The notes under the pieces were generated by a model, which was not told where the DNA came from, searched no databases, and saw nothing but the letters and a program-made list of their open reading frames with translations. A program made the translations under genes and the position numbers. A stretch of DNA of 64,000 bases from Kudoa neothunni (lineage: Eukaryota > Animalia > Cnidaria): assembly GCA_964304625.1 (NCBI GenBank), contig OZ199838.1:16971469-17035468 (forward strand), given 5' to 3'. This document shows positions 15,305-47,882 of this stretch, piece after piece (within the stretch, counting starts at the first letter, position 1; each line of letters starts with the position of its first letter).

Positions 15305-18300
15305 ATGAAAAATATCTCAAGATATTTGTTTGGTAACGTTAGTTGTTCATTTTCCTTCAATGATTGTTTTTCCTAGTTTTTGTAATCTTAATTACAATAA
15401 AAGATATTCCTGGTGCTCACCTAGCACATAGCATATGCGATCAATATGACGAAAGGAGGACAAATTATTTACAAACACACAAGGAACTTTCTGATCTAAA
15501 TACAAATTATGCGACAACAATAGAAATAGCTGAACCATTGATACAAAATTTAGAATCTAACAGCGCAGAATATCCTCGCGAGAAAATCGACTCAATGTTA
15601 AGTTTGAAATATGCCAATATTAAATTGGGAATATATCCAATATACGAGATAGATCCATTTGAACAACTGGGTATAAATTTGTTGACAACCGGACGTCCCA
15701 CGTTCCTCAAGATTCAAAGGGCTGGTATATGCTATTCAAGTTTATTGAGCGCAAAAAGCTTTATGTTTTTGTTAAAATCCGCAAATAAGGAAACTAATGA
15801 TTTCTTAAAGTCAACAAACGAAACTCATATAAATGTATTGAAAAATGATAAAAGCAAATGTAATGCAGCAACTACCAGAGACGAATTTTCAAAATATGTC
15901 ACATATATGGATGATAACAAATCTAAAATCGCCAAGCATTTTGAAGAGCTAAAAAAATATAAAACGAAACTGTACAGTTGCAATTATGATCCTTTGGAAA
16001 AGATTATAAACCTAAAACCGATCAAAGATAGTTTTATTGATCCTTTCTATCAAGCCATGTTTAAGGAAATGATACCTTATTTTAAAGGACTCAAAGCCAA
16101 ACTGGAAAATATTGTGAACACTTTCGATGCGTACAAACAATATGTAAAAAATTTTGATAGTCATGAAAATACAATAAAAAACATGAAATTTTCTGATTAT
16201 CATGTTAACAAAAACGACGTAGAAGCACAAACTCTGCTTAGAAATACAGAAGCTTTGTTCAGCTCCACTAATGGGTATTTGTCTTCGGAACTACGGAGTA
16301 CATTGGCGACAAAAATCAGCGATTTACGTCGACAATTGGCTTTAGCTGAAACGCAGAATAATTCGATTGTTACATATGAGGAAAAAATAAAAAGAATTAC
16401 TAACAACATAATTGAGTTGAAAAAAATTATTCCAAGCGTTATTCAAGAATTAGAACCGGTAAAAAAACAAGCGGCAGAATTCATACCTAGAATTGATAAA
16501 CAGCAATCAACCATGGACATCAAAGACTATGTTTTTGAACGCAAAGAGTTGGACTCGGAGATATACGACTTTTTACAGGTTAATGAAAAATTGCTTACTG
16601 AGTGTTTAGTAGTGAAAAATGAAAAGATCGATAGATTGATCTCGGAGATCAGCAGCAGTATGTCAGAACTCGAATCAATCGATACTCATCAGTTGTCTAC
16701 AACACAGGGGAGTTATGCTTCAAAATATGAACAAATTAAATCCGTCGTTGACAAATTAAGTAAGACTGATATTCCTGCTTATGAGGAAAAATTGAAAAAA
16801 GAACATATGGACCAACTTGACGTTGAAAATCAATTTATTAAATTAACGCAAATGGGCGAGAAGAAACAGAGCTTGTTGGCCACCCTGACTTCTAAAGAAG
16901 CTAGCCTCGATGCTGATTTACTCACCACACTAACTAGGGATTTAACTACCGCTAGTGACAAATTAAACAAAGTAACGGTCAATAATAACAACTTCCAAAG
17001 ACTTCTAACATCACAAAAATCTATGCTGCTTTCGCCCAATGGAGAGAAACTGCACAAAATTTTCTCGACCCATGTCGATAAATCCATGGATGAAATCAAC
17101 TCAACACTTGCTAAGATTATTGAATTGCAAGCAAAAATCAATAATATTAAAGAAAATATTGACACCAACCGCAATGGTTTAAATCAGTTTGATCAAATAA
17201 AACTAAAAATTAGCAGTGATCATGCAGCAATTCAAAGTGCCAAAACAGAACTATCAAAGCATCTTGGTAAACGATACAAAGAATTTAAATCTTTGTTTGA
17301 TAGAAATACCAATACTGTAAATTTGAACATTGCCGATGAAATTTCAGAGGTTAATACATCAATTGATGGTTACAAAAATGCTGTTGACTCCATAGAAAAG
17401 AGTATTGATGAAATTAATGGCGAATTAAACGATTTAAGGTCTGCAGTTAATATCGCTGTAAAAAAAACTAGCAATATTGAAAGCACACATTCAGGTATGG
17501 TTGAATCCCTCACTCTTGGTTTGAAAACAGTCAAAAGCTTGGATGATGCTAAATATACACAATTGAAAAAGAAACTTAGTGAAAAATTAGACGAATATAA
17601 GAAAGAATTTAAACAACAAAATGATAACCAAACTAATGAAAAAAGTCACTATTCAACATCGGTCACTAATGCTGAAAATTTGATTAAGAGAATCCAAGAC
17701 ATTAATGAGAATAAGCAGTTGAAAGAGCTTATCGAGGATGAATTGTCAGTGGAAAATAACCTCGGCAGCATAAAACAGTTAATCGACGCACATGGACAAT
17801 TGGTTTCAACTGGTGAATCTAATCTGTATAAGCTTGAAAATGATTATATTAAACATTCGACCAGTTATGATGAAGAAAAAAAGACTTATGATAAAAATTA
17901 TAAAGCTATTCAAGATCTTCTAAATGCTTATGATAAATATGAAAACGACGATTCGCACTTCTTAAACGATTCATTGGTCAACGACTTATTGAATGTTAAA
18001 TCAGAACTGGAACAAAAATATAAACAATCTGAATCATCAACTGATTCAATGAACCACCACTTGGCTGATTTAAATAATATAGACAACACATTGGATAAAA
18101 ACACTAGTCAACAAATTCAAAGTGTTAAAGACGAAATGCGACGTGTTAATGGATTAAAAGAATCCATTAGAAATTATTTTTCAAGGCTTCAGTCACTAAA
18201 ACAAATTGTCGATAAAATTAACGAGGCAAAAGTAAAGCTTGGGGAAAAGAGAGAATTACTTGTTAGTTTCCAAGGATCATTGGAATCACAAAATACCCAA

Positions 18301-19185
18301 AACGAACAAATTATTTCTTCCAATGAACAAAAAATTAAAACATCTTTTGAAACAGAAAATGAATCTCTTAAGGCTGCAAAAGTTGAAATCGAAAAAACAT
18401 TCGTTAAATACGATGAGCTTCACAAAGAATTGAAAAATAAAGCAGATAAGGAAGGAACTGATGTTAACTCTCATTTGGATGAAGAGTATATAAACCTTGT
18501 AGCGAAGAAAAATGAAATTGATCGTAATATTGAAACACAACGTGAATCTATTAAAAACACTCTATCCGAAGGAATAAGACATTGTGGAATAGAGAAAACA
18601 CGACTCGAAAAAGACTATTCTAGCCAAAATACTCAGTTAAAAACATTGTTACAAAATATTGATAGCCTTCTCAACGATTATGTGTCAACTGACATTGAAA
18701 GTAATGGAATGGCTGAATTAAATGATAGATACACCTCACTTATTAAAAATGTCGATAATTTACTTGATAATCGCAAAGATCTTACAATAACTGAATTCAA
18801 CGAGGAAATCAAAGCTAATATCCACATGATGCTTCAATATTTGAAACTAACATTGCAACTGCCATCGAAAATGACAAAAAATTTTTCGCTGATTTAAAGA
18901 ATAATGAATCGGCAAAAAACGTCGAAGTCATAGCTGATAATAATGAAGACGCTGTACAAGAAACTTTAGTTTCCCCCCAAAATGATATAACTGATGACCA
19001 ACAATACAGCGCAGTTAAGGGAGAATCAAAAAATATCGTCTCAACGGATTTTTTTCAAATATATAATGGCAGGTGCTGCTATAGCAACTATTTGCTTGGC
19101 AGTTGGAGGTGCAATACTAAAGTACAGAAGTCTCAAAAAGAGAGAAATTTACAACAAATGTGAAAATATATACATTAAAGCCTAA
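15305..19185 (+). CDS. Large type I membrane surface protein, paralogue A (~1278 aa if two 1-nt indels are corrected): signal peptide, Cys head, coiled-coil stalk, TM, Tyr tail
   Basis: Exon 15305-15332 plus intron 15333-15376 gives MKNISRYLFVFVILITIK (alternative in-frame ATG at 15296). Colinear with paralogue B. A -1 shift at ~18822 and a +1 shift at ~19049-19055 separate the TM/tail from the main ORF. Confidence 0.88.
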
Positions 19186-20812
19186 GAAGGTGCCATATTA
19201 AATTATAATTATATAAGCTCTATATTTAGATTACGTTAGTGTTACATTAGTATAGTATTTCACTAATAGATGATTGTTTGTTTTCTTTTTTGCGTTATAA
19301 ATGATGTTTTCTATAAAAATTACAGTGAGTTTTCTTTGGGTGAAAATACTTAATATAATAATTTTAAATCAATGATATTAATACAAGTATTATAGATTAG
19401 TTTGCTCGAAGCTAAGTTTGTATGTATCTTGGCCGTATTCGACGAGAAAAATTTCAAAAAAATAAGTATACTTCACCCTCTCTGCACCAACTTAAAAAAT
19501 ACGCGTATGCGTAATTGAAGTGCAGTTGGTGACCACTAATTAGTAATCCTCTCGGGGCTTGGAAAATTACGAATTACACATCAGTGACGCCTAATTCTCA
19601 ATATCTTTGTGCGCGCACATGATAAAATAAAATGAAAACCTGGCTTATATTGATTGATTAATCGATTAAAGAATATTCATATTTAAGATCAAAACTAAAA
19701 AACAATAAAACCCTCTTTTGGCGCGCCAAAAATAATTGCCATAATGGAAATAATATTATTGAGAACTTTTGGGTTTCATCTGATGTATGTAAAACAATTT
19801 ATTCGAAACAAAAATAATCATGTTTTGGAATCACTTACGAGGCGTTAATGGATAGAACTGCGCGGTATTATCGGACACTATATATCAATATATTTTATCC
19901 CCCTTATGATTTCCAAGAATTTAAAGATGTTGAGTGTTCTAATCTGTAATGATTCCTATGGGTACCGTGCTATCTTCGACATGGAAACTGATTTTTTTAA
20001 GTTGAATCTATTTTTAAAGCCATGAAACTATCCATAGCTAACATTTTTGAAATCATTTTCAGAAGAATCAATCTCATTTCTTTTGTTTATTATTTCGATG
20101 GACGATAATTCGATACTTTTTAACCTCATCCAAACGAACCACACATACACACGTTGATTAGAGTCTTCGTCTTTTCCTTTCCGCATTGATCTTCGTTTAG
20201 CTAGAAGCAATTGACTTTCTTCAAATTCCTGTTTAATTTGAGACTTTTATCTAAAATGCCATTTAAAGTTGAAATATAACCTATTTTGAAGCGTTTAAAA
20301 CGGTTTCCGTCTTTACATTTAAGAGCGGTAAACTATCATAATATGTAATTATATCACATTTCTCTTGAAGCATTATGAATTTGTTAATTCTTTTTCGGAC
20401 ATTTAGAAATAATTACGAATTATCGGTTATTACACAAGTTTAAAACTTTTTATTTCACAAAATAAAAAAACTACCCTTATATTTAATTAAGAACTCATAA
20501 TACATGTTATTTGATAAATTTATCTGGGTGGATAAAGTTTAAGGAAAGTTACGAATTAACAGTCACCTACTGTACCTGCGTACCCCCAATAAAATATGCG
20601 GTAAACTTGTTCAAAATATATCCAACTCATGAATTTAAAAAAAAGAAATACAATAACGTTAACTTATGGAATTGTTTAGAAGAGACCAACTTTTGGTCTA
20701 CAAATGAACAAATTTATTCATTTTTCAAGTCATGACTATAACACCGAAATATGTGCATCCAATTAAATAATATCTAGTGACACAAATGATATATGTCAAA
20801 TAAAACTATCAG

Positions 20813-22222
20813 TGTGGTGTACATAATCTCTTCTTATAACAATGTTAATTATATCATCTCGTTCCAGCTCCAATTTACTGCACTTAATTTTTTTCCTAGC
20901 AACCGACCAATGTGATTCATAAATCATCGTAAATGATTCTTCCCAATATCCACCAAATAGAAATACTTATTCCATAACATCCATTTCATAACCATATCCT
21001 ACAAAAAGATGGTAAACGAATAATACTTCCAAACGCCACCCTTTCCCCTACACCAGGGGTCTCTAAATTTTCTTTTGTCTACCTCCCCTGTGTAGGTAAT
21101 TTACTTAGTCGTTGACCCCTCTCAGAGATTTTATTAAAATATTAGAGTATATTCATTTTGTTTGACTAGAACAATTAAAAATATGTGCAATATATCCCCT
21201 TAATTAATAATCTATTTCCAATACATAATGCAATGCCAAATTATATTAACCCCCAGACAAACTTTTTTTAACGATGTAACATCAAAGTATAATAGAAAAT
21301 TCTTTAAATTTGTAGATTTACGCAGATATTTGTAATCAAGTAATGGCAAAAAAACAATTACATTCGAAAATTTACCACAATGAACGTATTTTTCATCATA
21401 AATCATATTCAATTGACTTGCCATGTTAAGTCGCTTGTATATGGTTATAGTTACATACTTTTGCACTTATATTAATACATCGGCAGATTTTAAGATTAAA
21501 TTACACATATACAGAAAAGTTAATAAGAATATCCTAATCTTTAGCCACAGATTATGTTCCTTAGCTTGAGGGCGCTTGAAGAATTTTTGAAGTGTCCGCT
21601 GGGGTTCAAGCGATACTTTCAAACTATTATATCTATTTTCGTAGCTTTTGTAATTATGGTTCAAATCAATCTTAAAAATTAGACTTATCCTTCTTAGTCG
21701 ATTATAAATTTAATATAAACTATCGTTATTGTTTTATAAATTGTTAATAACAATGAGTACTTTTGATCATTAATATTTACGAAAAATAAAGCCAGTGTAT
21801 TCACTAGTTCTTATGAGCTACAAAGTATCTCTACATAAATGAAAAAAAATTGACTTGCATAACTAGGAAAGGTGATGTTGGATTTTAACTTAAAAATAAA
21901 AAACAAATGTCATGGGGTAGTATCAATTAATATAATTAAATAATGTAGTATGGAGTTAAAGATGGGAAGCATTACCTTAAAAGCCTATAAAATTCAGTAG
22001 AATCTCTATAACACGTATCGACCATAGCGTAATTTTCGACCACTGTCCTAAACATCAAACAGTACCTATTGCACGAGTTCACGCCACAATGCAGGTTGCG
22101 CCAATACAAAAATGTAGTTTTTAAACACTGTTGGAATTTATCATCAACCTAATCACTTTTATTGTTTTACTTTCAAACTGTTTTCGTTTACTGGTCCTAA
22201 CATTCCAAACATAGTTACAACA
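20813..22222. mobile_element. Solo LTR interrupted by ~1 kb of inserted sequence (~21040-22065)
   Basis: TGT...GTTACAACA ends, near-TSD ATCAG/ATCAA. Its two halves align with the contiguous copy at 53231-53613. Confidence 0.75.
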
Positions 22223-23652: not shown

Positions 23653-25516
23653 ATGAGATTCCATGTATGTAAGGAATAAGAGCCATTGTTTTTATATAGC
23701 AAAAGGGTGTTTATTTTATCGAAAAGTATCAAACTTACATCAATTCTTATTTCTTAGGTGTAAGAATTAATCTTAAGGTTTAAAATGAGGTTGTGATGAT
23801 TCTGGTTGCTATTTTTCGACCCAATTTAATAACGCCAACGATGTTGTTATATAGAAACGTACTTATAATTAAAAATATATTTATTTTAGATTGGAGTTGC
23901 TGTGTTATTCAAGCCATTATCCACAGAAATTACCCTATATTCCCTTCAATTTGATAAAAAAAAACGATTGATGTATTCATCCGTTGTAAAGCAGACTAAA
24001 AGTTCCGATAAAATTAAAAGTTAAGAATATCTCATGATAAAAAATATTTAGCTATTGAAAACAAATTGTATTTGAAGAAAATTAGCGTTTTTATCAATAA
24101 ATGTATTACGCTGGCGATAAAATCTGATCATTTCAAGGATGTCAACAAAGAGGATATATTTATATTTTTTGTGCTTACTGACAATACTAAAATGATACTG
24201 TAGTTAATATTGATTTTTTTTACTGAATTATTATAGAAATATTGATGAACAAAAGATGGATCTATTAAAACAATCAATAGATATAGAATTGAAAGACTTC
24301 AAACAGTTGCGTCCTCACCCTCATCTTCTAGTGATGGATGAAAATCAGTTGAATATGGCGTTGTATTTTCACTCCCATTACCAATATAAGGAACAGGTTT
24401 AATTTTTGACGCTGGTTTGTTTTCTTGTCAGATCTAATAGGAAAACTTGGGGATTGTTGAAATGGGATTCACCACATTGAGAATAATGTACCCCCTGGAA
24501 AAATTGGATGAGTCTCTTAAACAGTGCTACTTTATGAATAAATACAACTCCACATTTGAAACTGCGGCCTATCCAATTTCAAAAATGTTTTCTGTTGCCT
24601 TCTCCTGCACAGGTTACAGAACAATTTACAACATGCTATCAATGTTAATAATTCAAGTGAGATTGCAATGAGTGAAAGTTATTGGGTGCACTTAATAGGA
24701 TAAAAAATATTTTATTCATATTAATTCTAACGATTCAAAAATCAGCGAATTATTTACTTCACATTATATTCATTAGAGTGGAAATTATTTAAACGCTGAT
24801 TCCAACGAGTTGCTGAATCCTTGTATTCCCGAGGGGTCGTCGTATTTCCTGAACGTGAACGAAATTCTTAACATTTGCATTAAACCTACTCACGTTGCAA
24901 CTTATTCTTCAAATTACAAGTTTTTGGGAAAGTTCGATCAAGAAGCTTGCATGAAACTACTAGATTCTGTGCATTCAACAATCCATTCTAGGGTGAAACC
25001 AGAATTCATGTTAATGGTGAATCAGATAAAGTGTGACATTATTTTTGAGCCAGAATTATCATTTTTGGTATTTTGTTTCTAATAAGTTTTTAACAATAAA
25101 ACAAATTTTTAAGTTTTTGGGATTTTTTGAATACCTGGATCAATTTGGATGGAAACACGGGGATGATATTGAGTTACTCATTAAAAATCATTGCACCGAA
25201 CCTTATCCAAGTAACGCCAACGTAAGTGAAGTTAATATCGTATATCTTATAAATAGAAATAAATCGTAGATGAAATTAATAATTAACGATTGTTTCAATC
25301 TGTTAGTTCTTCGACACACGCTGAAAATTTTACTCAAAACTGACCCTCAAAACATCATCATACCAGTACTTATTGTTGACTAATTTTTAGGTTTTTTCTT
25401 AAAATCAGATTTAATTCATTATCTATGCCTATTAGGACACTCTGATCAATATGCAAATGGGCTTAGGTTATTTTGATCCACGCATAAAGGAAGCAGACGC
25501 CAAATATTTCAAATGA
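23653..25516 (+). CDS. GDA1/CD39-family NTPDase (apyrase) homologue, predicted catalytically inactive, 456 aa, 11 exons
   Basis: Exons 23653-23664, 23700-23759, 23790-23858, 23890-24019, 24052-24199, 24237-24396, 24441-24656, 24777-25067, 25114-25221, 25270-25365, 25436-25516. All introns GT-AG; total 1371 nt with no internal stop. CD39-like segments in order: ENLGIVEMG, FSVAFSCTG, LNPCIPEG, GKFDQEAC, KNHCTEPY, DCF, LGYF. The first two exons are less certain. Confidence 0.85.
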
Positions 25517-25854
25517 ATTAAAATCTTGCTCATCCTATTCCCCACATTGATTCTTACATTATACACCGCTATCTTCCTGGCTATTTTATGTGTTGAGAAC
25601 AAAAGTTAATGAATACATTTATAGAAGTCATAATTTTTCCATTAAATCTATAACATGAAATTTGTGTGATAAATTTTTGAAGGCTTACTTCTATATTGAA
25701 GATTAAAATGTGGGGCAATGATGACTTTTTAAGTTATTTACCAAGCTACTAGGTAATATAATTCCTAATTATTTTGAAATTGAATAATAATATTTTTAAT
25801 GATTAGACTATTTATCCAACAAATAAATATTAGTAATACTTGTTTTGTTGATTA

Positions 25855-27687
25855 CAGCAGGCATCCGATTTTGCACACTTTTCTCAATCATCTTTTGACT
25901 GAATTTTTGTTTGACATCAATTAAATAATAAAGATGTCCATAACTCGTATTAAAATTGTTAGAAATGTAGAAGAGAAATATAATATAATATTTTGAAAGT
26001 TTACCCTATTTTTAACGCTAAGATAGCGACAGTAAAACATTTCCAAATTTCGAATATCGCCACCCTAAATGGGATTCTTCGTAAGAAATTAGAAATAATT
26101 TCCATCGTTAGAGAAGGATTTGCATCGACTAAAAGAAAAAAACATTCATAATGGATCAAACATTGATTCATTACGAAGGTGTTTATGATTGGATATGTTT
26201 GATTAGGGGGAACAAATAGAACCGTCGCCCCTGATATCGTAAATAAAAGAATTGAGCTTTCTGTAGAAAATAAGAAACCAGAACATGTGACAATTGGTTG
26301 GTTTAAGAGCTTTAAAAAGCGATTTAATCTAAGAAAAATTAATATCCATGTCGAATTCGCAGATATAGATTCTGTGGTTGTGAAGAATGGATTCCACAAC
26401 TTAAAGTCATGTTAAAATTATAGCTCAGATTATATATATATATATATATAGTATCGACGAATCTGCATTATTCTACTAGCAACAGAGAGATATATGCAGT
26501 TTTTAACGTTTTGATTTATTTTATCGATAAAAGTTTTGTAGTTTCATCAGAAAGAAATATAAAGAGGACAAAACAATCGATGAATCGAGTAACTATTTTA
26601 TTAGGTCTCTCAATGAGTGGTGGAATACTCGAATCACTAATAATCGACAAACACAAAATCTCTCGTTGTTTTAAGAATATTAAAAAACTTCCTGTGTCAT
26701 ATGATAAAAATAATAAATGTTGGATGAATAATGATGGATTCTTAAGATATATAACCTAGCTTAATTAATTATTTGCAAAAAGGAATACACAGGCGTTATT
26801 GTTCCTTTATAATGCATCATGTTTCTGTAGAAAAAATTTGAGCAACATAAAAATGGGGTTTCTCCGCCAAAAACTACGAGTGTTTTGCAACCTCTTGATC
26901 AGTGGATAATATATTCGTTTAAATATGCCTACGAAATAGCTATGCTTAAACGATATATTGCTCGTGTTGAAACAGGTATTGATCCCATCCCTCCGAACAT
27001 ATTAGAGGCAATGTTACTTATAGGAGACGCTTGGAATATGGTTTCTCCATAAACAATTAGAAATTGTTTAAAAAAATATTTTCCTATTGATAAATTGTCT
27101 TCTATACTACTAAGCGATGATTTAATAATAAAACATGCATCTAATAGAGAAATGAGTGATATTATATGCCCAGAGGAAATTAATAATGAAATAAAGGGGA
27201 TAATTCAAGAGGGATATGAAATTTGTTGTTTTTATGATGGCTATTCTACATTAGATTTAGATAGTAGAGATAATTTAGTGGATTCGGTTAAGGATGGTGA
27301 TGGATCTGGTGAGGAAGTGCTTGAAGGTAAATCTGAGGATACCCCTGTTCTGAATTTCAAAGAGGTTATTGATTCCATCAGCGAAATTAAAAAATCCTTT
27401 CTGAAAAACGATGTTGATCGATTAAGAATTCTTTCAAATCTTGGGAACGACGTATACGATATCATGTGGAAAAATATTAAACAATCGAAAATAACAGATT
27501 TTTTCAAATGTTAGAATATAAATATTGTCCATTTTACTATATTGCGTTTTATCTTTATATAAATATATTTTCTCAGTGATTAAGAGTTAAAATTTTACTT
27601 TTAATTGTTAAAAATATAATATTAAAATATGATGTGTGTGCGCCTTTCACGGTCCTGGAGGGATTGTGTAAAATCGATTGCCTACTG
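25855..27687 (+). mobile_element. Decayed full-length pogo/Tigger element
   Basis: TIRs CAGCAGGCATCCGATTTTGCACA and (rc) CAGTAGGCAATCGATTTTACACA, flanks TA/TG. Transposase motifs GWFKSFKKR, RVTILL, LQPLDQ, QSKITDFF, with stops. Confidence 0.88.
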
Positions 27688-33117: not shown

Positions 33118-33210
33118 ACTCATTATCACTCATTATCACTCATTATCACTCATTATCACTCATCATCACTCATCATCACTCATCATCACTCATCATCACT
33201 CATCATTATC
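33118..33210. repeat. 10-bp tandem repeat (CATTATCACT)4(CATCATCACT)4
   Basis: Directly visible in the sequence. Confidence 0.95.
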
Positions 33211-33289: not shown

Positions 33290-34687
33290 CCAGTTATATT
33301 CTTTGGAAATAGCCTGAACGAAGAATGTATCGTAATATCGATGGTAACTCTCACATAAAGCTTTCAACTTATCCATTTTTAATTTAACATCTTTACTCCG
33401 AGGATCATTATTAGGATTGCATAAATAAAACATGGCTTCTTGTTCAACTGAGCTTTGTCGCTCGTAAATTTTTAATAAAAGTTAGTAGACCTGAATGTGC
33501 TTGATCAAACCTAGCATAAAAATGTCGATGGAAACTTTCTGCATTATTGGAGGTTAGAGGTATGTCATTAAGGGTTCGAGAATGAGCGTTCCATGATTCA
33601 ACAGTGTATTTGTTACTATTAATGAAGTTCTTCTCAAAATAACTTAGGAATAGATTCAAATTCTTTATTTCAATTTTCTTGGCTTGTAGAAGTAATTTTT
33701 CAAATTCTATCTTCACGCAATCTTTCGGCACAAAGGCTAACGAAGTAACGCACTTGACAAAAAGTTTAAACTCAATATCTTCCTGATAAAACTTTGATAG
33801 ACCCAATTTATGCAATCTTCGATTAACGCATTGGCCAAGATGGGACAAGCAGAAGAACACATTATGTTTTGTTTCTTTTTTAAATGCATTATACGCGGCA
33901 ACCTCAAAATCTATGATAATGTTGGGAAGTTCCAGGTTTCCTTTCTCTCTTATAATTTGAATAATACGGTCATAGCTGCTCTCCGACCTATCTGTCATTA
34001 AAATAAACACCAACGGTAATATTTTGTTAAAAACGTGACCATGAATGGTGTACATTTGGGAGAACGTTCCGTCGCAAACCCAGAATTTGGAATGTTTCAG
34101 GTGCGAAAGATTTTCTTCTGTTGTAAAAATAATAATTCTATTGCTATCCTCGGATCCAGAATCGTATATACAAAAATTTTTGTTCCTTAAGGTCACTATC
34201 GATCCGCAAAGATTTGTCTCAGGATTTACATCAATACTCTTTCGTTTTCGTATATCTCGAATCACCTGATAAACGGACTTTTTTGGAATATTTGGACATC
34301 TTCTTGATTAGTTGCAATATCATACACTTTATTAGTTGGATATACAGTATTTTCTGCGATATGCTTGATTTTATCCTTGAAAAATTGTTTGTTTTTTTTC
34401 TTCCTCGGATACTAAGTGACTATGAAAACCTAGCGTATCCAACCTCTCTATCTGTTCTGTCAGAAATGTTCTTAACCTACCTTTACATCCTCGTTTTTGA
34501 CACCTCCAATACTGACAAACTTTTGTTTTATAATCTTTATTATAAAAACCCATTATAAAAAATATCTTTTTTCGTCTTGGTAATAATAAAATCAGCACTA
34601 ATTTCTTGGTTCATGATTTTATACGCGCGCCGATGATTATATACGAGAAAACGCGCATGCGCGACTCCGGCAAAACTTGGGCGTCCC
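33290..34687 (-). mobile_element. Decayed MULE element with FLYWCH-like domain
   Basis: YWRCQKRGCKGRL (FLYWCH-like), WVCDGTF, QMYTIHG, IDFE.AAYNA, CLSHLGQC, TSNNAESFH. GC-rich terminus ending GGGCGTCCC at 34687. Confidence 0.88.
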
Positions 34688-36355
34688 TAAGTTGTTGGCA
34701 AGTAAACTATATCGTACGATGGCATCCTTATTATCCACAGAGTCAATCTTATTTTTGACTGTACGCATCGAGACATTCCACACTCAACCCTGCTTTCGAT
34801 TAGACTGTTCACATGGACGGACAATATGTATGCACAATTCATCGAATCATTCATCGCTACGACGAACTAGGCGAATACCAGAGAGTAGAGTTGTGGAAAC
34901 AACAATATGGCCTGAGTGTGATTTAGAATCACAGTGAATGCATATTTCAAATCGAAATCCACTTGCTTCTATTTCTTCTCAGGAGTCACACCAACACTCA
35001 CAACGTAATTGCCGACGAGCAAAGAGAACGAAGACGAGAAGAAAATAGAGTAAGAAATAGAAATCGACGTGTATGTGAGACGACTCAACAGAGTCCTGCA
35101 GTGTCACCTATAAATGAACACAACACAGGATCAGACAGTAAATTTGTACCTGAACCTTATTACACTCCTGTTCTATTAGGTCAACAAACGCGAAGTATGC
35201 CTGATGATACTTGGAATATGGTCGCTTTGCATTACGAACGTTGCTACAACATGAAAATGAAACGAATATTACAATTTGGAAAATGTCGAAAATTTGTCCA
35301 AAATGCCGCGCTAAGAAGTGGATAAACGAATTTTCGGGTATGTGTTGTTCCGGCGGTAATGTTATTTTGGACACACTACCTGATTCATCTCATTTTCTAT
35401 GAAGACTCCGGAATTTCAAGACACTTTCTACAAAATATCCGAAAATACAACTTCACTTTCCAGATGACATCTTTTGGAGCGAACGTAATTTGTAGGAACA
35501 GATTCATGCCTACTTTACTTTTAAGGTTCACGGTCGAATGTGTCATCGAATTGAATCGCTATTGACTTCTGAAAATGAGGAACGAAATTCTTGCGATTAT
35601 ATTTCGTACAAAACATGTATTTTCAAGCTCAAAATCGATCCAATATGTATCTCTAGCATAGGCATAATATTATTTTAGCGCTTCAAGATATGTATGTTAC
35701 ACAGACACACTAGCTACATCCACAGTTTTAGGCATGACTTAGAAATGCACCCGTCTTCTGATTTTGATATAATTATAAACTCTGATAAGCTTCCACAGGG
35801 AGAAAATGAGAGAAAATACAACTCTCCAACTTGAAATGAGGTGGCCATCGCAATGACGGATGAGCAGCATTGACGAAGGATATTGTTTTGAGGAGTACAA
35901 ACAACAAACTTCAGAGGATAAGCGAAACACACAGATCGCATTATGTATTGCAATATCCATTAACTAATGTCTATGGTCAAGATGATTACCATTTTTGTAT
36001 TTCACAAATTGACGCAAACAAAAGTGTTTCATGTCAGAATTTTTATTCTCTCCATTTTATGGAAACGGAAAAGAATTTTAACACGCATCATCACTTTAGG
36101 ACATTATTCCAACAATATGCTGTAGATATGTTTGTGAAGAGGGAATCAGAGAGACTTTGTTTTATCAGAGCGAAACAAGATGAACTTCGTATTGAATCTT
36201 ACATCAATTTAATTGATAGCATTAGTAGCAACGGTGAAATAAATGGGCGGGGACGGTTGTATACTTTGCCATCGACTTTCGCTTTCGTAGGTTCACCACG
36301 CTATATAAACGAGAGGATGCAGCTTGCCATGACCTACGTTTGATGTTTTGGAGGA
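34688..36355 (+). mobile_element. Truncated Helitron copy 1 (N-terminal part of RepHel)
   Basis: CPKCRAKKW...CCSGG zinc motif, FLQNIRKYN, LQYPL, LFQQYAVDMF, LPSTF..GSPRY. Inverted homologue of 53600-55160 and 60654-60733. Confidence 0.9.
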
Positions 36356-37430: not shown

Positions 37431-37439
37431 AATATGCAA

Positions 37440-38900
37440 TTAGGAAATCTGAGAAAGTATCGATAATTGGATGATAAAGTTAAAATAATAAACTATGATG
37501 ATATAAAAAATTTCGGTAGCTTGAATGCTAAACCCGTTGAGATATTTGAATTTAAATCGGAATCTTCCTTGAACAGCATAATATTAAAAAATAGCAGTAT
37601 TCTGGAAGATTATAACAATGGGGACCTATATCACAACAGAGAAACCTTAAGAAAAAATAATTTCAACATTTTAGATTCTAAGGTTAAAGATTGGATTGAG
37701 CTAACCAGATCACGTAATATCGAACTCTCTCAGGATGATATAATTAAAAAGTCTACGATTACTCATATAATGTTAAAACACAATTCTTAAAGTTGATAGA
37801 GGGTGGTACATGTTGGTTCTAAGGATTTTCTTCGAGAGTTGGGTGGAAAGTAACAAATTCATACGTAAATCCAAGAATGTTGTTCCTAAAATAATATCCG
37901 CTTGGAAAGATCAACTGTTAAAGTTGATTGGAAATTATGATCCAAAAGATATTTTTAGTTGGATGAAGCTGGAATATTTTACCAGCAAAAGATAGTTAAA
38001 ATATCATTTAAATTTATATCTCCATATGAAATTTAATATATGGTTATGCATTTGAAATGGAGGAAAACTTGCACGGTTCTAGAAAATCTAGAGAGAGTAA
38101 CAATTGTTGCGATCTACTCGATGTCAGAAAAAAGACTCATTAATAATTCGCAATCGTGAAACACCTTGATGCTTCCGTGAAATAAACGACCTCACACCTC
38201 CCTATTAAACTAACGTGAAGACTTTATTTTTTCAAAATATCTGATGGTATTATTGAAGCTAAAACTTCTCAATGTAAGGTAGGAATCATATGATCTGGTA
38301 AAAATTTCAAATCTTGAACTCTGGAATCCCCCACAAGGAACAACCAGCGTATTGCAACAATCAGATCAAGGAATTATTTAAGATTGTTAATACATTTACA
38401 AAAATCATCTGACGAGTTATTTGATCAATAAAGTTACTGTTAATATTATTAATATTTTTGATAACAATTCAAATAATGATCCTTCAGATTTACTTGAACA
38501 TATGTACACGATGAAAGTAATGTGGAAATTAGTGAGTGAAGAAACAATCGAAAACTATTTTAATAAATAATTCTTGTTAATAATTGTGGGTCAGGAGGTA
38601 TTATCATTTCGACTGGAAGAAAATCCCTAGAAAAATCAAATTGAATGTGGGGTTAACATAGAAGAAACTATTTCATTTGAAGATCCAGAAGATAAATATG
38701 TTAACTCAATAAATAATGAAGTCGACGCAATGAATGTATCCTTTACTCATGAAAATTATTAAAAACCATGCATCGTTTTTTCCATTAATGAAGTTATTGA
38801 GCATTTTAATAAACTGAGAGAAAATATTTTTGCTTATGACTTACTTATGTTATAAAATAAAACAAAATGGGACTCTTTCGTCTTTAAAATAAGTCACGGT
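37440..38900 (+). mobile_element. Heavily decayed pogo/Tigger transposase
   Basis: ILDSKVKDWIELTRSRNIELS (CENP-B-like HTH), YDPKDIF, GTTSVLQQSDQGII. Confidence 0.7.
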
Positions 38901-40275: not shown

Positions 40276-42198
40276 CAGTCAAACCTCGATATTGCGAGGT
40301 AAATCGTGGATTCAATTTTACTACGCAATACAAAATTAGTACGCAATGCCGATGCTCGCGCGTTGAAGGAAAATTGTATTTTTATGATTTAACCTATTTT
40401 TTAAGCATAGAATCCAGAAATGAAAATATAAGTTAATTGTTGAATGAGGTTTCTTTTTATTTTGTGTGAAAAAAGTTCGTTATGGTAGTTTGGAGTTCTC
40501 TTTTTTTTAGTATTGAGATCAGTCGGTCCATTACAGGGTGTAGGTCGAATAAACCTTCAGGTTCTTCCGCGATAAAAGTTTCCCTTAAAGTTCGTATTTC
40601 TTCCCTAATTTTTTTTGTAGGAACCTTTTTTATAGCTTTGTCTATTTCATCCTTTTCATTATCAGATATATCATTTATGTCGCTATTAATGACGGGATAG
40701 GAGTTTGCTTCATCGTGAACTTTTTCGTTAATTTCAGAGGATGATACGTCATCAAATGAGTCTAGTTAATTTTAGAAATTAATTTTTGATAGGATACCTT
40801 CATGAGTGTTATCATATTCTTGAATTTCTTGAATAGTTGTTGATGCTATTAAACATATATTTATAATTTTAATCAAAAACACCGGACTTTTTAAAGCAAT
40901 TAATAATTGTTTCCTTCGAAACATTATTCCAAGCATTTTTTAACGTTTTTAATCGAATAAAGTATAGTTTTTTAATATTTATTCATTATCATCCAATACA
41001 CTAACCGAATGGAAAATTTTTTTATAGTTGCTTTTTAATGAGTTAATTATTCCTAAATCGCAAGGCTGTAATATTGATGTAGTATTCTTCGGCAAAAATA
41101 AAAATTTAATATTTTCTAGACCGTCCATGTCTTTAGGGTGGGAGGGGCATTGGTCTAATAAGATTAAAACTTTTCTATTCTCTTTTTCAAACATATTGTT
41201 AAATTTTTTCATGATTTGAAAAAAGATAAAGGCGTTCATCCATGAGTTTTTCTGTGAAAAATATTCAATTGGTAGATGGGATATATTTTTAAAACAACGA
41301 GGCTTCTGATATTTACCAATTACAAATAATGGTAATTTTGAATCATCTAAGCTAAGGCCGCGGATACTAAAACCGTAACACGCTTCTTGGACACTTTAGA
41401 TCCTCGGGCATCTTGTTCTGCTTTTAATACATAAGTTCGCTTATTAATTTATTGGTAAAAAAGCGCAGTCTCATCAACATTAATAATATTTGTTGGATCG
41501 TAACTTTGCAGAATATCTTTATTCTCAAATTTCCAAACATATATTGAAGAAGAATCAGCACTAGATGCTTCCCCGTGAAGTCTTACGGAATAAAGTCCAA
41601 ATCTATTTTTAAAGCAAGCCAGCCATCCTCTACTTGCATTAAAATTGTCGATATTCTTTTCTTTGGCGATTGACAATGCTTTTGCTATTATAATTTCGCC
41701 AGAAATTTGTTTTTTATTATTTCGGGCATTTACAATCCACTTATAAACTTGGGTATCGACATCTTCATGTTTACCGTTAGAAAATCGCTTTCTCTTGTTA
41801 GGAATATTGGAATCAGTAATTTTTTGTTCCATTGAGAGAATTCTACTGAGAGTTGAATATTCTTAACAAAAATTATCGTTATTATTAATATAAAGTAAAA
41901 ACATTTGAATACTTAGTCCGAATTTCATTACGGTCATTTTTTTGCACTTTTAACTGATTTAATTGAATTATAGTAATCAATAATTTCATTGGTCTCATCA
42001 ATATCTCGCTGCACTCTCGACATTGTCAATTTTACTGCGCAATATCGAATAATATACGCTTTCTTTTATTTAAAAAGTTTTTTCTTCACGATAATTTTAT
42101 AATATTAGCATTAATATATCTAATATATTTTCCATTTTAACTAAAATAGAACAAATACAAGAGATATTGGGCTACTACGCAATACCGAGGCACGACTG
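40276..42198 (-). mobile_element. Full-length pogo/Tigger element with TA TSD and a 50-nt intron
   Basis: TIRs CAGTCAAACCTCGATATTGCG and (rc) CAGTCGTGCCTCGGTATTGCG, TA on both sides. Motifs FNASRGWL, NVDETALFY, LLDQCPSH, LQPCDLG. Removing 41862-41911 gives MKFGLKYSTLSRILSMEQ. Internal stops and frameshifts. Confidence 0.93.
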
Positions 42199-42209
42199 TA
42201 ATTAGTTAT

Positions 42210-43830
42210 CGAAATGGCATGACGAAATTTCGCCAATGTCGCTACGCACGCACATGCAGAAACATGTGGACGATTCAAGCATGCTAGTATGATTTGAACG
42301 CATGCGCCGTTGCAAAAACTCAACATTTCTGGTGAATCTAATTTTAACAAACCAAATTATTTGCAATTTAAAACCATAAGGAAGGAAGTAAAAATCATGT
42401 TCAATAGATTTAGTTATGTGATGGATTGTTCAAATGGTAACAATCAATATTGGAGATGTCAATACAGAATATTTAAAGGAAGGCTTAGAACTTCACAATT
42501 GGATGATATCTTGCAAATTGAAGAAAAATGACCCATAATCGTTCTTTATCCGTTAATGAAATAAGAAAAATTACTCTTCATCAAAAAATCAAGGATTCGG
42601 CTGAAAGTACAAAATATCCACTAATAAAGTTTATTCTATAACCACAAAGTTTATCAATCTTCATGATCTCCCGATAATTTCAAAGAATTCAATGTATAAA
42701 AATATTCAAAATTCTAGAAAATTGAACTCCATTGATGTCAACTACGAATCCAACTTATATGACTTAAATATCAAATTATTCGGAAATATAAATTTGGCGC
42801 TATGCAACTCCGATTCCAAGGATGCTGAATGTGTCATTATTTTTTCTACTCTCCAAAACCTTGTACATTTGAATAATTCAGAAGTTAGGATATTTCAAGG
42901 GACGTTCAAGGCGGTGCCAAGAGAGTTCTCACAATTATACATGATTCATGGGAGGATATTGGGCAAGGATTTTCCACTCATATATGTATTAATGGCAAAT
43001 CGAATCGAAACGATGTATGCCAAAATTTTGTGCATTCTCAAAGATAAGAAAATGAAGTTTACCAAATTTTTGATTATCGACTTTAAAAACTAAGTATTCA
43101 ATGCTTTTAAAAGGACATCAAATAATAAGTCCATAAAATTCTGCCTTTTTCATTTTGAACAATGCGTCCGGAGACGAATACAACAAGATGGATTATCTAA
43201 TTTATATGAAAATAACGTTGATTTCAAGTTTTATATCAAATGTTTCTTGTTCCAATAGATTTTGTTCGCTATGAGCTTACCAAATTGAAAAATAAAAGAA
43301 ATAAGTTTGTTGATGTGGATTTAGCATCGTTTATAACTTATTTCGAAAACAACTTTATAAATTATTCAAGATTTTTAGTAGAAAATTGGAATGCTTTCGA
43401 CTGTGTTATTGAGGGAATAAACCTAATATCGAATTAGGCAGAACCATTCAACTGTCATTTTCATAATCGATTCTATCAGAACCATGCTGGCTTACAAACA
43501 TTTATGGAGGTATTAAAAGAAACACAGAGTAATACCGAACACGATATTCAATCTTGCATATGCAATCCAAATTCTATTTTATATGAAACACATAATGTAC
43601 TAAAAATGGATAAAATTAAAGATTTCCTCCTTAAATATGAGAAATATTACGAAACGTATAATTTGGAAGCTATTTCCTTGATGTGTATTTGGAAATTAAG
43701 CTAAAATTATATTTTGTAATTAAATTAACTCTCGTCTATAAATATTTTTGTAGTTTGCCTTATATATTCGTGAATTTATAATTTAACGCAGTTTGTGCGT
43801 GCGCAGACGTCGAAAAGTCCCCGGCTGATT
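42210..43830 (+). mobile_element. Decayed MULE element related to 33290-34687
   Basis: YWRCQYR..KGRLRT, GTFKAVPREFSQLYMIHG, IIDF, YFENNFI. Weak GC-rich terminal inverted similarity (CGCACGCACA). Confidence 0.85.
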
Positions 43831-43994
43831 TTTAACAATTACCTAACCAAAATTTTTTATAATTCAAATGTCATAATAGCATATTAGGCCATTGAAACAC
43901 ATTTCTATACAGAACACACTAATATTACTATTAAAATGAATATTTCTAAATTACTACGTAACTTGGTTCTGTATGGAATATTATCGCACTACTA

Positions 43995-46900
43995 TCATGC
44001 TTTGATGTAAATATTTTCACATTTTTCGTAAATTTCATTCTTTTTGACGCTTCTGTAGCGTATTACCGCACCAGCGATTGCCATAGCCACTAAGGCTACT
44101 GCAGCACCTGCCACAATCATCTTGAAATGATCTTTTGCTAATACATTATTAGACTCTCCTAATGCTGCAGAACTTTGATATAAGCCCACATGATCGCTTT
44201 CGTGATTATCATGTTCTACAGAATTTTGAGATACATCTACCATATTTATGGTAGTCCCAACTGATTCAGTAGATGATTGGTTGCTGTTTAAATTTTTAAC
44301 ATAATCTTCGTCTTTTATCATTGCTGTATCAAGTTTATTCCTAAATTCTTCTGCTTCTCTTGGAATAGTGGCTTCGATTTGATCGTTATTTATTGTAATT
44401 TTAATAGGATCTTTATTTCGATCAAGGAAACTCTCTATTGTTGAGATAAGTACAGTGTATTTTATGTCCAATTCATCTAAATTGTTTTCATTAGTTTCCG
44501 AACCAATTTTCGTTAATAATGATTGAATTTGATCTAATAAGTCGGCAGCTTTAGATTTTTTTTCGGAATATTCATTGTCAATGCTATTTTGTTGGTTAAT
44601 ATAATGCGTATTGGCTTCGGAAATGGTTTCTGATACGTTTTTCAAATTCTCCTCAAATTTTTCTATCAAACTTTGTTGTGTAACTTCCATTTCATTAAAT
44701 TTCAATGTCAACTCCTCAGGAATATCATGATGTAAACCGCTGGATTTAGTTAACATTGCGTTATGTGCTGCTTTGTATTCTTCAAACTTATTTAAAGTTG
44801 TAGACTTTTCATTTTCTAATAATTTAGTCTGTGATTCACCATTAGTTGAAATTTCGGCTTGTTTATCCTTTATCAAATCCTTATTTTTTTCGTATTGAGA
44901 CTGAATTGCTGCCAAGAAGCTATTAAGCTTTCCTTTTTTTTCAGCGAGTTTTTTGGTAGCTTCATTAATTGTAGAGGCTGTTTCTTCGAATGAATTCAAT
45001 TTCTTAAAGAATGAATTAAGTTTAGTTTTTTCATTTAAAACATTCCTGGAGTACTCTTCAATAAATTGTGCTTCAACAGCAATCTCACTATTCACGTTGC
45101 TTTTCATAGTAGACAATTGTGTCAATTCCTGTTTCATGTTGTCGGTTGTAGCTTTGAATAAATCAAACTTTTTTTTCAAATCAACTTTCATTTTTTCAAT
45201 TATTTCCACATCATTATTTGAAAATGCAGATTTATCATTATTAAATGTGTTATATTTTTGAAGAAGGCTCATTATGTCACTCTTGGCGGTTTCCAAAGTT
45301 GCAGTGTTCTTCTCATAGTTTGTAGAAATTGAAGACAATTCATTTTCATGATTCTTTATTTTATTATCTACTTCAGTAACAGATTCACCACACGCGATAT
45401 TTAGATCTTTCAAACTCGAAAAATTATTTTCCACCGAGAATTCTCCTTCCAGGTGTCGCACAATTATTGAACTCTGGTTAATTGATTCAATCTTTGCTAC
45501 CTTGTCGTTAGCTTCTTTGATGGTTTTTGTATAATATTCATTCTCTTTTTTATAACCATTGCTTTTGGTATTGAGTGTTTCTTTGTAGTTTTCAAATAAA
45601 TCGGTGAGTTCATCTTTGATTCTTGTGAAAGAAGTTTTATCCATGATTTCGACTGTTTTTAGTCCATACTCAAGAGATTCCACCATATTAGCATGCACAT
45701 TTTCCATATTTTTGACTTCTATTTCGTAACCGGATTTCAAGGATTTCAATTTGTTAATTTCGTCAACTATACCAGGGATCATGAGTTTAATACTTTCGTA
45801 GGATTTTTCATAGTTTTTGATATCATTTGATAGTTTTTCAACTTCATTATTGAGATTTAAATTTAAATTTGATTTTTCTTTAGAGATCAATAATTCAAAT
45901 TCACCAGGCGTAATATTTTTACTAGTTGATAATTTCTTTTTTGCTTCTTCTATATTTTTATAATCTTGGGTTAATTTTTGAGTATGCTCAATGATACTAT
46001 TCATAAGTACTTTATTTTCGTTGATTTTGGATTGAGCATAATCAATTTGGGATTTTAAATTATTCTTATTTATCGTGGTTTGGCTCAATTTTTCTTTGGT
46101 AACGTCAACCAAGTTAGAAAACCAGCCTGACATTTCATTAGCTTTAGTTATGAGAAATGAGGATTTATTTTTGGGGAGTGACAATTTGAAACGATCATTA
46201 TTATCTTTCACTTTTTGTATGGTTTCCGATGCTGTGGTCAAACTATCTTCTATTGTTGTTAATTGTGTATTATCAATTTGGGATTCATATGAACCTAAAT
46301 TTTTTAACAGTTCCTCCTTTCTACTACCAATATCATTCAATTTGGTGGCGGGATTTGTAAAGGATAGCATATCATCTAATTTTTTCTGATTAAGGTTTTT
46401 TCGATATAGTGGAATTTCTTCTTTTGTTATGGTTTCGATTTCAGATTTCAACGTTTGGTAGGTTTTTAAAGTATTTGTATTCTCAGTTTTCAATTGGTCG
46501 GAAGTTCTTTGCAACTTTTCAACATTATTATTAACTTGAGTATACAAGTTTTCAACTTTTTTAAACTCAAGATTTAAACTTGTGTTAAATGATTGTCTTG
46601 TCTCCTTCAAAAATTTTTGAATTTTATTGTTTAATCTTTTACCGCTAAACGTTCGATCTCTTAATTCGGATACTGACGGGAGTTTGTTGATTTGTGATAT
46701 ATAATCATCAATTTTCTTTTTTATAGGTTGTATGCGGTTAATGGCAACAGACGTCGCTTTAGTTAATTCGTCTAAATTTTTTAGTGTTAACGTAATTTCA
46801 GTTATAAATCCTTTAGTTTTGGAATCCAGATTTTTGTACGAGTTAAGCGCTGCTTGTAGTTCACCAATTTTTTTTTTCATTTTATTCAACAAATCTTCCG

Positions 46901-47882
46901 AGATATAAGTCGTTGATGATAAATCACTTTGTGTTTTTGTTAGCAAACTTTCAATTTCATCTTCTTTGTCAATAGGCACGCTCCCAATCTTCAAATTATT
47001 TAGAATTGAAGTGAAATTTTTATAATTATTCAAATAATTTTCAAACAATTCTTGATTGTACTGTGTGATAAAAGATTGCATCTCAGATTTGATGTTTTCA
47101 AAGTATGGAACCATTGCCTCTGTCATTTTAGTATAGAAAGGGTCCATTATTTCATTTCTTTCTTTTATTACCTGAGTTAACTTAATTGTGGGATCAACAA
47201 GGCAGTATTTTTTGTTATATCTATAATTGTCTAAACTTTGTCGGTAATTTTTCATTGTTTGTATGGAATTTGGCATGTCTTTAATTGAAGTTAGCATATC
47301 GAATCCTAATTTATAAGAATAACAATCATTATAATCAGTAGCATTCACATCTTGATAAAATTTGAGCTGTGCATTTAAAAATTGTACAGCTTTATCATGC
47401 TCCTCTTGATATTTATTTGTGGAGTGGCATGCATTCTTGAATTGTTTGAAATCTCCGGCGGCCGTATGTAAACGTGACAAATTATCTCTACATAATCTCT
47501 CCATTGGCTTTTCGGTAACATATTGTTTAAATGGTTCTACTTCATAGATTTCATACGCTTGAACAAGCAAGAACAGTTCTTTTCGCAACAAATTATCTAT
47601 TTTCTCGTCAGTATAACGAAGCATGTGAGATTTGTATTTTTCCCTTGCGTTTTGAAGGGTTTTCACCATTATTTGAGATCTTTTAGTTTCTTCGTTCAAC
47701 ATATTGTATTTTTGTATATAGTCTTGCCTTAATTTATCATAGATTTCACACGTGGACACATTTTCATAGTTTATTGTAGGAGTAGTGGAATAAGATGACA
47801 ATGTCATCAACAACACGGAGTCTATGCAACTAATTAGTCAATCTAAATAATAATAGTTTTTACATATTAGTTGATTGAACAT
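43995..47882 (-). CDS. Large type I membrane surface protein, paralogue B (1281 aa), intact
   Basis: Exon 47882-47864 plus intron 47863-47822 gives MFNQLIYSVLLMTLSSYS. Single long second exon. TM IVAGAAVALVAMAIAGAVI, tail RYRSVKKNEIYEKCENIYIKA. Confidence 0.92.

What the first reader, a model, noticed from the sequence alone, without database searches (positions are those of the whole stretch)
15305..47882. Pair of giant orphan surface proteins with shared architecture: a candidate new adhesin/receptor family
Seen: two convergent genes (15305-19185 +, 47882-43995 -) of nearly equal length (~1278 and 1281 aa), each with a tiny first exon and a phase-1 intron (44 and 42 nt) inside the signal peptide. 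Both have a ~240-aa head with shared motifs (CxxYDxxRxxY, EKID, YxIYExxPF, CxxDP, DPFYxxM, MxPYF), a ~950-aa K/E/N/L-rich helical stalk with colinear anchors (MVESLxxGLKTV, SVENN, INEA), an acidic linker, an Ala/Gly-rich TM and a 21-aa tail. Known: Plasmodium reticulocyte-binding-like invasion ligands have a similar two-exon, long-helical, TM-anchored layout. Inference: a lineage-specific family that projects a ligand-binding head far from the cell surface. I recognise no homologue, and the Plasmodium resemblance is architectural only.
Basis: partly seen in the sequence, partly recalled or inferred. Interest (0 to 1): 0.85.

Follow-up and report, generated by a model that had tools for sequence, protein, structure and literature searches.

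The report
Orphan stalked parasite surface protein pair
Two old, divergent duplicate genes, probably from a fish-parasitic cnidarian (myxozoan), encode ~1,280-residue membrane proteins with a small disulfide-bonded head, a long helical stalk and a nearly invariant short inner tail; they have no detectable relatives and most likely hold a binding head away from the cell surface, though one copy is frame-broken in this assembly.

Summary
The pair is real. Gene B (47882-43995, minus) is intact: a 19-nt exon, a 42-nt GT-AG intron, 1,281 aa. A and B are colinear paralogs (27% identity over 1,147 aa, E 1e-104) with saturated synonymous sites, so the duplication is old and both were kept under selection. 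Identity is 25% in the head, 28% in the stalk and 85% in the 21-aa tail.

No homologue was found: head profile against 1.84 billion proteins, word searches, PDB, Pfam, NCBIfam, three contig collections. AlphaFold models are all-helical but low confidence; Foldseek was uninformative. Signal-peptide layout, basic residues after the TM, cysteines in the head and twofold depletion of N-glycosylation sequons favour type I topology with the stalk outside. The transposon mix and introns suggest a myxozoan (inferred only).

Best reading: a lineage-specific stalked adhesin/receptor with a tail bound by a conserved cytoplasmic partner. It resembles Plasmodium RBL ligands in layout but is not one (half the size, different cysteines, no sequence match). 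No ligand is shown.

The parts
15250..15259 (+). TAATAACCTA motif 46 nt upstream of the ATG of A; also upstream of B
   Evidence: 4 copies in the window vs 0.44 expected, 3 of them upstream of A or B. Motif chosen after the fact; overall upstream similarity not significant
15305..15332 (+). Gene A exon 1 (28 nt): basic n-region and start of the h-region of the signal peptide; a further in-frame ATG lies at 15296
15333..15376 (+). Gene A intron, 44 nt, GTA...AG, phase 1
   Evidence: unspliced reading stops after 23 codons
15377..16107 (+). Gene A exon 2: rest of the signal h-region, then the head (4 Cys at 15436, 15730, 15859, 15979)
16108..18828 (+). Gene A helical stalk, about 900 aa, heptad-rich
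   Evidence: 38% of 28-residue windows with strong a/d contrast vs 4% in shuffles
18825..18897 (+). First frame break of gene A (about 18825-18835) and the premature stop that follows in the original frame (18895-18897)
18834..19049 (+). Gene A acidic linker, readable only in a different frame; second frame break at about 19045-19056 (a run of T)
   Evidence: (p=0.0005)
19063..19119 (+). Gene A transmembrane helix (19 aa, Ala/Gly-rich)
   Evidence: Kyte-Doolittle 2.27
19120..19185 (+). Gene A 21-aa cytoplasmic tail and stop: basic cluster, conserved Cys, two distal Tyr, ends YIKA
43995..44060 (-). Gene B 21-aa cytoplasmic tail and stop; 85% identical to A, last 9 residues identical
   Evidence: (I5: 79% DNA identity over 85 nt)
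44061..44117 (-). Gene B transmembrane helix (19 aa, Ala/Gly-rich)
   Evidence: Kyte-Doolittle 2.61; the only internal hydrophobic segment
44118..44369 (-). Gene B acidic, Ser/Thr-containing linker, about 80 aa
44370..47069 (-). Gene B helical stalk, about 900 aa; long helices broken by short loops, best-supported bundle at residues ~960-1135 of exon 2
47070..47821 (-). Gene B exon 2 start: rest of the signal h-region, then the head (5 Cys at 47750, 47492, 47429, 47324, 47204); predicted all-helical, no heptad signal
47822..47863 (-). Gene B intron, 42 nt, GTA...AG, phase 1, with a CTAAT branch-point-like motif
47864..47882 (-). Gene B exon 1 (19 nt), start of the signal peptide
47944..47953 (-). 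TAATAACCTA motif upstream of B (a second copy at 48266-48275)

Best explanation
A and B are paralogous type I membrane proteins of a small-intron, transposon-rich animal parasite, probably a myxozoan. Splicing of a short phase-1 intron creates the signal peptide (layout shown, splicing inferred). The protein enters the ER. A ~230-aa helical head with 4-5 Cys, probably disulfide-bonded, sits on a ~900-aa rod of long amphipathic helices: about 40-60 nm if folded as hairpins or three-helix bundles, at most ~115 nm if extended (helicity predicted, length inferred). An acidic flexible linker leads to one Ala/Gly-rich TM that may self-associate (inferred). The 21-aa tail is nearly invariant, with a basic stop-transfer cluster, a Cys, two distal Tyr and a class-II-PDZ-like end. 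It is most likely bound by a conserved cytoplasmic partner for sorting, anchoring to the cytoskeleton or signalling (conservation shown, partner inferred). The most likely role is an adhesin/receptor that holds the divergent head beyond the surface coat to bind host cells or matrix, the two paralogs having different specificities but the same intracellular coupling. A's two frame breaks are more likely assembly errors or very recent lesions (about 65%) than old decay.
For: Paralogy and colinearity. Four-fold sites in the stalk are at chance identity (0.27 vs 0.30) while second codon positions are 0.59 identical, and A keeps 1,150 stop-free codons although its other frames have a stop every ~9 codons: long purifying selection. 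There is one internal hydrophobic segment, followed at once by a basic cluster in both proteins. Both have hydrophobic N-termini across an intron of the same phase. Cys are concentrated in the head, three at aligned positions. N-x-S/T sequons occur at about half the expected number in both ectodomains (9 vs 18.6, P=0.006; 9 vs 15.6, P=0.03) while most control motifs do not, as expected of a chain exposed to the ER glycosylation machinery. Heptad signal is in the stalk, not the head. AF2 predicts an all-helical ectodomain. Tail identity is 85%. Myxozoan context: FLYWCH-MULE, IS1595-like, Helitron, Pao-like and pogo elements match the Myxobolus landscape (10.1101/2024.02.09.579586); GTA...AG introns with little other signal match PMC13644364.
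Against: No ligand, expression or localisation data. The head is no more divergent than the stalk (25% vs 28%), so there is no sign of diversifying selection on it. The structure models are poor (pLDDT 38.6 and 48.0) and gave no fold match. B's signal peptide is weak (no basic n-region) and no SignalP-type tool was available. Only two copies are known and one is broken. The organism is inferred, not identified; 40-nt introns are longer than the 22-27 nt medians of myxobolids.
Confidence: 0.5

Rival explanations
1. Same topology, but a structural spacer or homophilic linker between the parasite's own membranes (cell-in-cell contacts, spore valve suture, capsule or secretory-organelle lining), not a host-binding ligand.
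For: Head and stalk are evenly conserved, with conserved length and 3% gaps, which suggests a molecular ruler. Sequons are depleted. There is no hypervariable region and only two copies in the window. Myxozoans form cell-in-cell stages.
Against: A distinct Cys-containing, non-heptad head at the distal end, and a tail conserved like a signalling or sorting tail, fit a receptor as well or better. No localisation data.
Confidence: 0.25
2. An endocytic or nutrient-uptake receptor, or a shed immune decoy: the tail tyrosines drive internalisation, the acidic linker is a shedding site, and A's truncation (if real) gives a secreted form.
For: Conserved Tyr in the tail; acidic unstructured juxtamembrane linker; A's frame would end before the TM; Thelohanellus nutrient uptake is described as mainly endocytic (PMC4986447).
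Against: The tail has no canonical YxxPhi or NPxY motif (own knowledge of the consensus). A's TM and tail show no decay, so a secreted form would be very recent or an artefact.
Confidence: 0.15
3. A tail-anchored cytosolic tether (golgin- or nesprin-like): the N-terminal exons are not used, the coiled coil faces the cytosol and the 21-aa end faces the lumen.
For: The only library signals are generic coiled-coil matches (SMC-type models far below cut-off; weak Pfam hits). Long heptad stalk with a near-C-terminal TM.
Against: Both paralogs keep a signal-like N-terminus and an intron of the same phase. Basic residues follow the TM. Head Cys are conserved. Sequons are depleted. No KASH PPPX end. 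No hit to any conserved tether with a head profile against 1.84 billion proteins.
Confidence: 0.07
4. A true, highly diverged homologue of Plasmodium RBL/RH ligands, by lateral transfer or deep ancestry.
For: Same two-exon plan with a phase-1 intron near the start, signal peptide, helical ectodomain and C-terminal TM (PMC4771344). Apicomplexan-like surface families have been claimed in Sphaerospora. In A two Cys are 43 apart, against 44 in PvRBP2a/2b.
Against: No RH/RBP chain was hit in PDB by the head profile at E<=10 or the ectodomain profile at E<=1; no Pfam or NCBIfam hit. The apical Cys pair 4-6 residues apart is absent, and the 43-residue spacing does not hold in B (35 or 56). Less than half the RBL size. 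Phase-1 introns in signal-peptide regions are common in secreted eukaryotic genes (own knowledge).
Confidence: 0.03

Closest known systems
Plasmodium reticulocyte-binding-like family (PvRBP, PfRH, Py235)
   Same: Two exons with a tiny signal-peptide exon and a phase-1 intron; N-terminal helical Cys-containing head; very long K/E/N-rich helical ectodomain; one C-terminal TM and a short tail; paralogs and broken copies (PMC4771344; PMC7003471).
   Different: 1,281 aa vs about 2,800 aa; introns of 42-44 nt vs 140-245 nt; head starts straight after the signal peptide; different Cys pattern with no apical Cx3-5C loop; no sequence similarity; the host genome is animal-like (Pao, Helitron, FLYWCH-MULE).
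Sphaerospora molnari lineage-specific surface families (VSP-like, RIFIN/STEVOR-like, ETRAMP-like; bioRxiv 10.64898/2026.02.11.705288)
   Same: Taxon-restricted single-pass surface proteins of a myxozoan, with a conserved short C-terminal motif and a proposed role in host attachment or immune evasion.
   Different: VSPs have more than 10% Cys with many CXXC motifs; here Cys is about 0.6% and there is no CXXC. No Pfam match to RIFIN/STEVOR or ETRAMP. Much longer, helical ectodomain.
Tail-anchored coiled-coil tethers (golgins; KASH-domain nesprins)
   Same: Long heptad-rich region with a TM close to the C-terminus.
   Different: Signal peptide and type I polarity; Cys-containing head; no KASH motif; no family hit.
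Stalked 'lollipop' adhesins in general (e.g. bacterial NadA-type adhesins, streptococcal M protein; own knowledge)
   Same: Design principle: distal head, helical rod, membrane anchor.
   Different: Unrelated sequence and secretion route; the predicted stalk is broken into 20-80-residue helices, suggesting antiparallel bundles rather than one parallel coiled coil (low confidence).

Membership tests
Plasmodium RBL/RH | Two-exon gene, short first exon carrying most of the signal peptide | tested here: met
   (layout only; splicing not testable); definition from PMC4771344
Plasmodium RBL/RH | N-terminal signal peptide and single C-terminal TM | tested here: met
   hydropathy; no dedicated signal-peptide predictor available
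Plasmodium RBL/RH | Full-length size above 280 kDa (about 2,800 aa) | tested here: not met
   1,281 aa vs 2,818-2,872 aa
Plasmodium RBL/RH | RH5-like domain with two conserved disulfides, one an apical pair 4-6 residues apart | tested here: not met
   head Cys at 20, 118, 161, 201 (A) and 24, 110, 131, 166, 206 (B): no pair closer than 21 residues; pattern
Plasmodium RBL/RH | Detectable sequence similarity to RH/RBP proteins | tested here: not met
   no RH/RBP chain in PDB profile searches; no Pfam or NCBIfam hit; zero hits among 1.84 billion representatives
Plasmodium RBL/RH | RH5-like helical fold of the head | tested here: inconclusive
   AF2 head pLDDT 25-45; Foldseek no match at E<=0.001 in PDB
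Plasmodium RBL/RH | Apical localisation and host-cell receptor binding | not testable with these tools
   needs experiments
VSP-like proteins (diplomonad / Sphaerospora) | More than 10% Cys with more than 5 CXC/CXXC motifs | tested here: not met
   7 Cys in 1,274 aa, no CXXC; definition
Tail-anchored golgin / KASH tether | No signal peptide; coiled coil in the cytosol | tested here: inconclusive
   sequence signals point to the opposite topology, but splicing and topology are not shown directly
Tail-anchored golgin / KASH tether | Family domains (KASH with PPPX end, golgin or spectrin-repeat models) | tested here: not met
   tail ends YIKA; no such Pfam model above cut-off

The most novel reading that the evidence does not exclude
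A new family of host-recognition ligands of a myxozoan, in which a parasitic animal has independently evolved the Plasmodium RBL design (signal-peptide mini-exon, novel helical disulfide head, long helical rod, conserved signalling tail), with paralogs giving alternative host-receptor specificities and a head fold not yet in the PDB.
Probability: 0.3. Interest if true: 0.75.

Novelty: new variant of a known kind. Interest (0 to 1): 0.5.

Why it matters
If these are host-facing ligands of a myxozoan, they would be among the first defined adhesin candidates in a group of damaging fish parasites whose attachment machinery is almost unknown. They would be testable targets for antibodies or vaccines, and a clean case of convergence on the malaria RBL layout. 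The nearly invariant 21-residue tail offers a direct route, by pull-down, to the parasite's cytoplasmic coupling machinery, and a probe to count the family across genomes. The tempering facts: orphan single-pass surface proteins are common in fast-evolving parasites, the design (head, rod, anchor) is a known kind, and no function is shown.

Tried and rejected
Homology searches, all blank: head word search in 5.8 billion proteins; TM+tail word search; head profile vs 1.84 billion representatives; metagenome scans; genome and viral contig scans; phage blastn; exact look-ups of six window ORFs. The stalk was not searched on its own in the two large protein collections (caps spent), and the word searches see only proteins of 0.55-1.75 times the query length. 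PDB sequence hits (AbiGII E 0.003, spike HR fusion E 0.016), NCBIfam SMC/Rad50/SSL11 hits and Pfam hits are far below cut-offs and were rejected as helical or compositional noise. Foldseek hits (axonemal filament proteins, tape-measure proteins; TM-score at most 0.31 for the head model and 0.13 for the ectodomain model, rmsd 8-110 A) were rejected. An intron explanation of A's stop was rejected. Internal repeats in the stalk are at or only slightly above shuffle level. General upstream similarity of A and B is not significant. The organism could not be named: related MULE transposases came only from ENA/Logan samples, and a literature link for one record name (RIIS20) was not confirmed at sample level. 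Exon-wise PDB searches of neighbouring genes were blank. The spliced (joined) models were not searched or folded; exon 2 was used by reference. Gene A was read through only with X (or NNN) at each break.
Full report
Observation. Gene A starts at 15305 (+) with a 28-nt exon and a 44-nt GTA...AG intron; gene B starts at 47882 (-) with a 19-nt exon and a 42-nt GTA...AG intron; both introns are phase 1. Read unspliced, both frames stop within 24 codons, so a signal peptide exists only if the introns are removed. B's second exon is one open frame to the stop at 43995, giving 1,281 aa. A's second exon is not open: it stops at 18895-18897. From about 18830 to 19050 the sequence homologous to B's acidic linker lies in another frame (score 65 against shuffles of 32+/-6, p=0.0005; the original frame there scores no better than chance), and the TM and tail return to the original frame. 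The few in-frame GT..AG spans would remove sequence homologous to B, so these are two frame breaks, not an intron. I read A only with X at the breaks. The joined spliced models were not searched or folded; exon 2 was used by reference.

Relationship of the two genes. BLASTP aligns them over 1,147 residues at 27% identity with 3% gaps, E 1e-104. Identity by region is head 25%, stalk 28%, linker 25%, TM 46%, tail 85%; the last nine residues are identical, and the TM-tail DNA is the only part seen as a repeat, at 79%. Four-fold sites in the stalk are at chance identity (0.27 vs 0.30) while second codon positions are 0.59 identical, and A carries 1,150 stop-free codons where its other frames have a stop about every nine. 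The duplication is therefore old and both copies stayed under purifying selection. A's breaks are either assembly errors or very recent; nothing downstream of them has decayed. I put about 65% on error: one break is in a T run and several myxozoan assemblies rest on nanopore reads, but longer runs in B read correctly. There is no third copy in the window.

Anatomy. Each protein has one internal hydrophobic segment of 19 residues, rich in Ala and Gly, followed at once by a basic cluster: the type I pattern with the tail in the cytosol. The first ~230 residues after the signal hold most of the ectodomain cysteines (4 of 6 in A, 5 of 6 in B, three at aligned positions) and are enriched in Tyr and Pro. 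They lack heptad periodicity (8-12% of windows, within the shuffle range), whereas the stalk has it strongly (38-50% vs 4%), so the head/stalk division is real. AlphaFold with only two sequences gives all-helical models of low confidence (pLDDT 38.6 and 48.0). The stalk appears as helices of 20-80 residues or more, separated by short loops, with the best-supported part (pLDDT 70-80) at residues ~960-1135. About 760 helical residues give a rod of roughly 40 nm as three-helix bundles, 57 nm as hairpins and at most 114 nm extended. N-x-S/T sequons are about half as frequent as the composition predicts in both ectodomains (P=0.006 and 0.03) while most control motifs are not. That is modest independent support for passage through the ER lumen, and speaks against a cytosolic tether.

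Homology. Nothing was found. The head profile retrieved no protein at E<=0.001 among 1.84 billion representatives. Word searches with the head and with TM+tail were blank, as were scans of metagenome, genome and viral contigs and of phages. Pfam and NCBIfam gave only sub-threshold coiled-coil noise. PDB profile searches found no RH/RBP chain, and Foldseek gave no meaningful match. Limits: the word searches see only candidates of 0.55-1.75 times the query length, the stalk was not searched separately in the large collections, and none of six window ORFs is in the protein collection, so this genome and perhaps its close relatives are not represented.

Source organism (inferred). The window is 70% AT. 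It carries FLYWCH-MULE, IS1595-like, Helitron, pogo and Pao-like elements and host genes with introns of about 30-45 nt. Abundant MULE elements with FLYWCH, IS1595-like and retroviral-protease domains describe Myxobolus (10.1101/2024.02.09.579586), and splice signals reduced to GTa and AG describe myxozoans and Dicyema (PMC13644364). The closest MULE relatives come from metagenome and run assemblies; one record is named RIIS20, which suggests a codfish gut study (PMC7054092) but could not be confirmed. A myxozoan is my best guess (about 70%). The contig is not human-like.

Mechanism. Shown: paralogy, long selection, a single TM with positive-inside polarity, a Cys-bearing non-heptad head, a heptad stalk, and a tail far more conserved than the rest. 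Inferred: splicing, disulfides, surface display, rod length, a ligand for the head and a partner for the tail. The tail carries a Cys that could be acylated, two distal Tyr and a C-terminus that fits the class II PDZ-binding pattern; it has no dilysine ER-retrieval or KASH motif (own knowledge of these consensus patterns). The simplest working model is a stalked adhesin or receptor whose paralogs differ outside and share coupling inside (0.5). Rivals are a spacer or linker between the parasite's own membranes (0.25), an endocytic receptor or shed decoy (0.15), a tail-anchored tether (0.07) and a true RBL homologue (0.03).

Comparison with known families. Plasmodium RBL genes share the two-exon plan, signal peptide, helical ectodomain and C-terminal TM (PMC4771344), but are about 2,800 aa and are defined by an RH5-like domain with an apical Cys pair 4-6 residues apart (PMC7003471). 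Size, cysteine pattern and sequence tests all fail, and the fold test is inconclusive. These proteins may work like RBLs but are not members. They are also not VSP-, RIFIN- or ETRAMP-like, the surface families reported from Sphaerospora molnari. Literature searches found no description of such a family in myxozoans.

Verdict. A real, apparently undescribed family of large single-pass helical proteins: a new variant of a known kind (stalked surface proteins), with one intact and one frame-broken copy here. It stays worth following because of the conserved tail, the old duplication and the RBL-like layout.

Noticed in passing
window 23750-25600 (+): Multi-exon gene with 30-45-nt introns that looks by eye like a degenerate ectonucleoside triphosphate diphosphohydrolase (apyrase/CD39 family), catalytic motifs apparently altered; exon-wise Pfam and PDB searches gave no hit.
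   Followed up: partly
window 8800-10700 (-) and 8100-8660 (+): Two further multi-exon host genes with short introns; the minus-strand one looks helical-repeat-like by eye; neither identified.
   Followed up: partly
window 10937-13677: IS1595/Merlin-like DNA transposon with terminal inverted repeats of about 170-240 nt at 90-96% and a broken transposase.
   Followed up: partly
window 34766-36279 and 53656-55170: Two inverted copies of a Helitron fragment, 99% identical over 1.1 kb and 91% over the next 0.4 kb.
   Followed up: partly
window 55169-60650: Pao/BEL-like LTR retrotransposon in several pieces on the minus strand, bounded by 132-nt direct repeats 97% alike; family assigned by eye.
   Followed up: no
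window 33290-34590 (-) and 42355-43700 (+): Two FLYWCH-MULE transposons; closest relatives (up to 73% identity) lie in ENA sample ERZ795007, which may hold DNA of a related organism.
   Followed up: partly
window 40979-41832 (-), 3200-3484 (-), 26511-27514 (+), 37467-37995 (+): Several decayed pogo/Tigger-type (Tc5/DDE_1) transposon fragments; the last two assigned by eye.
   Followed up: no
window 15250, 47944, 48266, 6834: The 10-mer TAATAACCTA occurs 4 times (0.44 expected), 3 of them upstream of A or B on the coding strand: a possible shared promoter element; the copy at 6834 has no obvious gene downstream.
   Followed up: partly
window 33118-33206: Tandem array of a 10-nt unit, 8.9 copies, 98% matches, next to the MULE element.
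   Followed up: no
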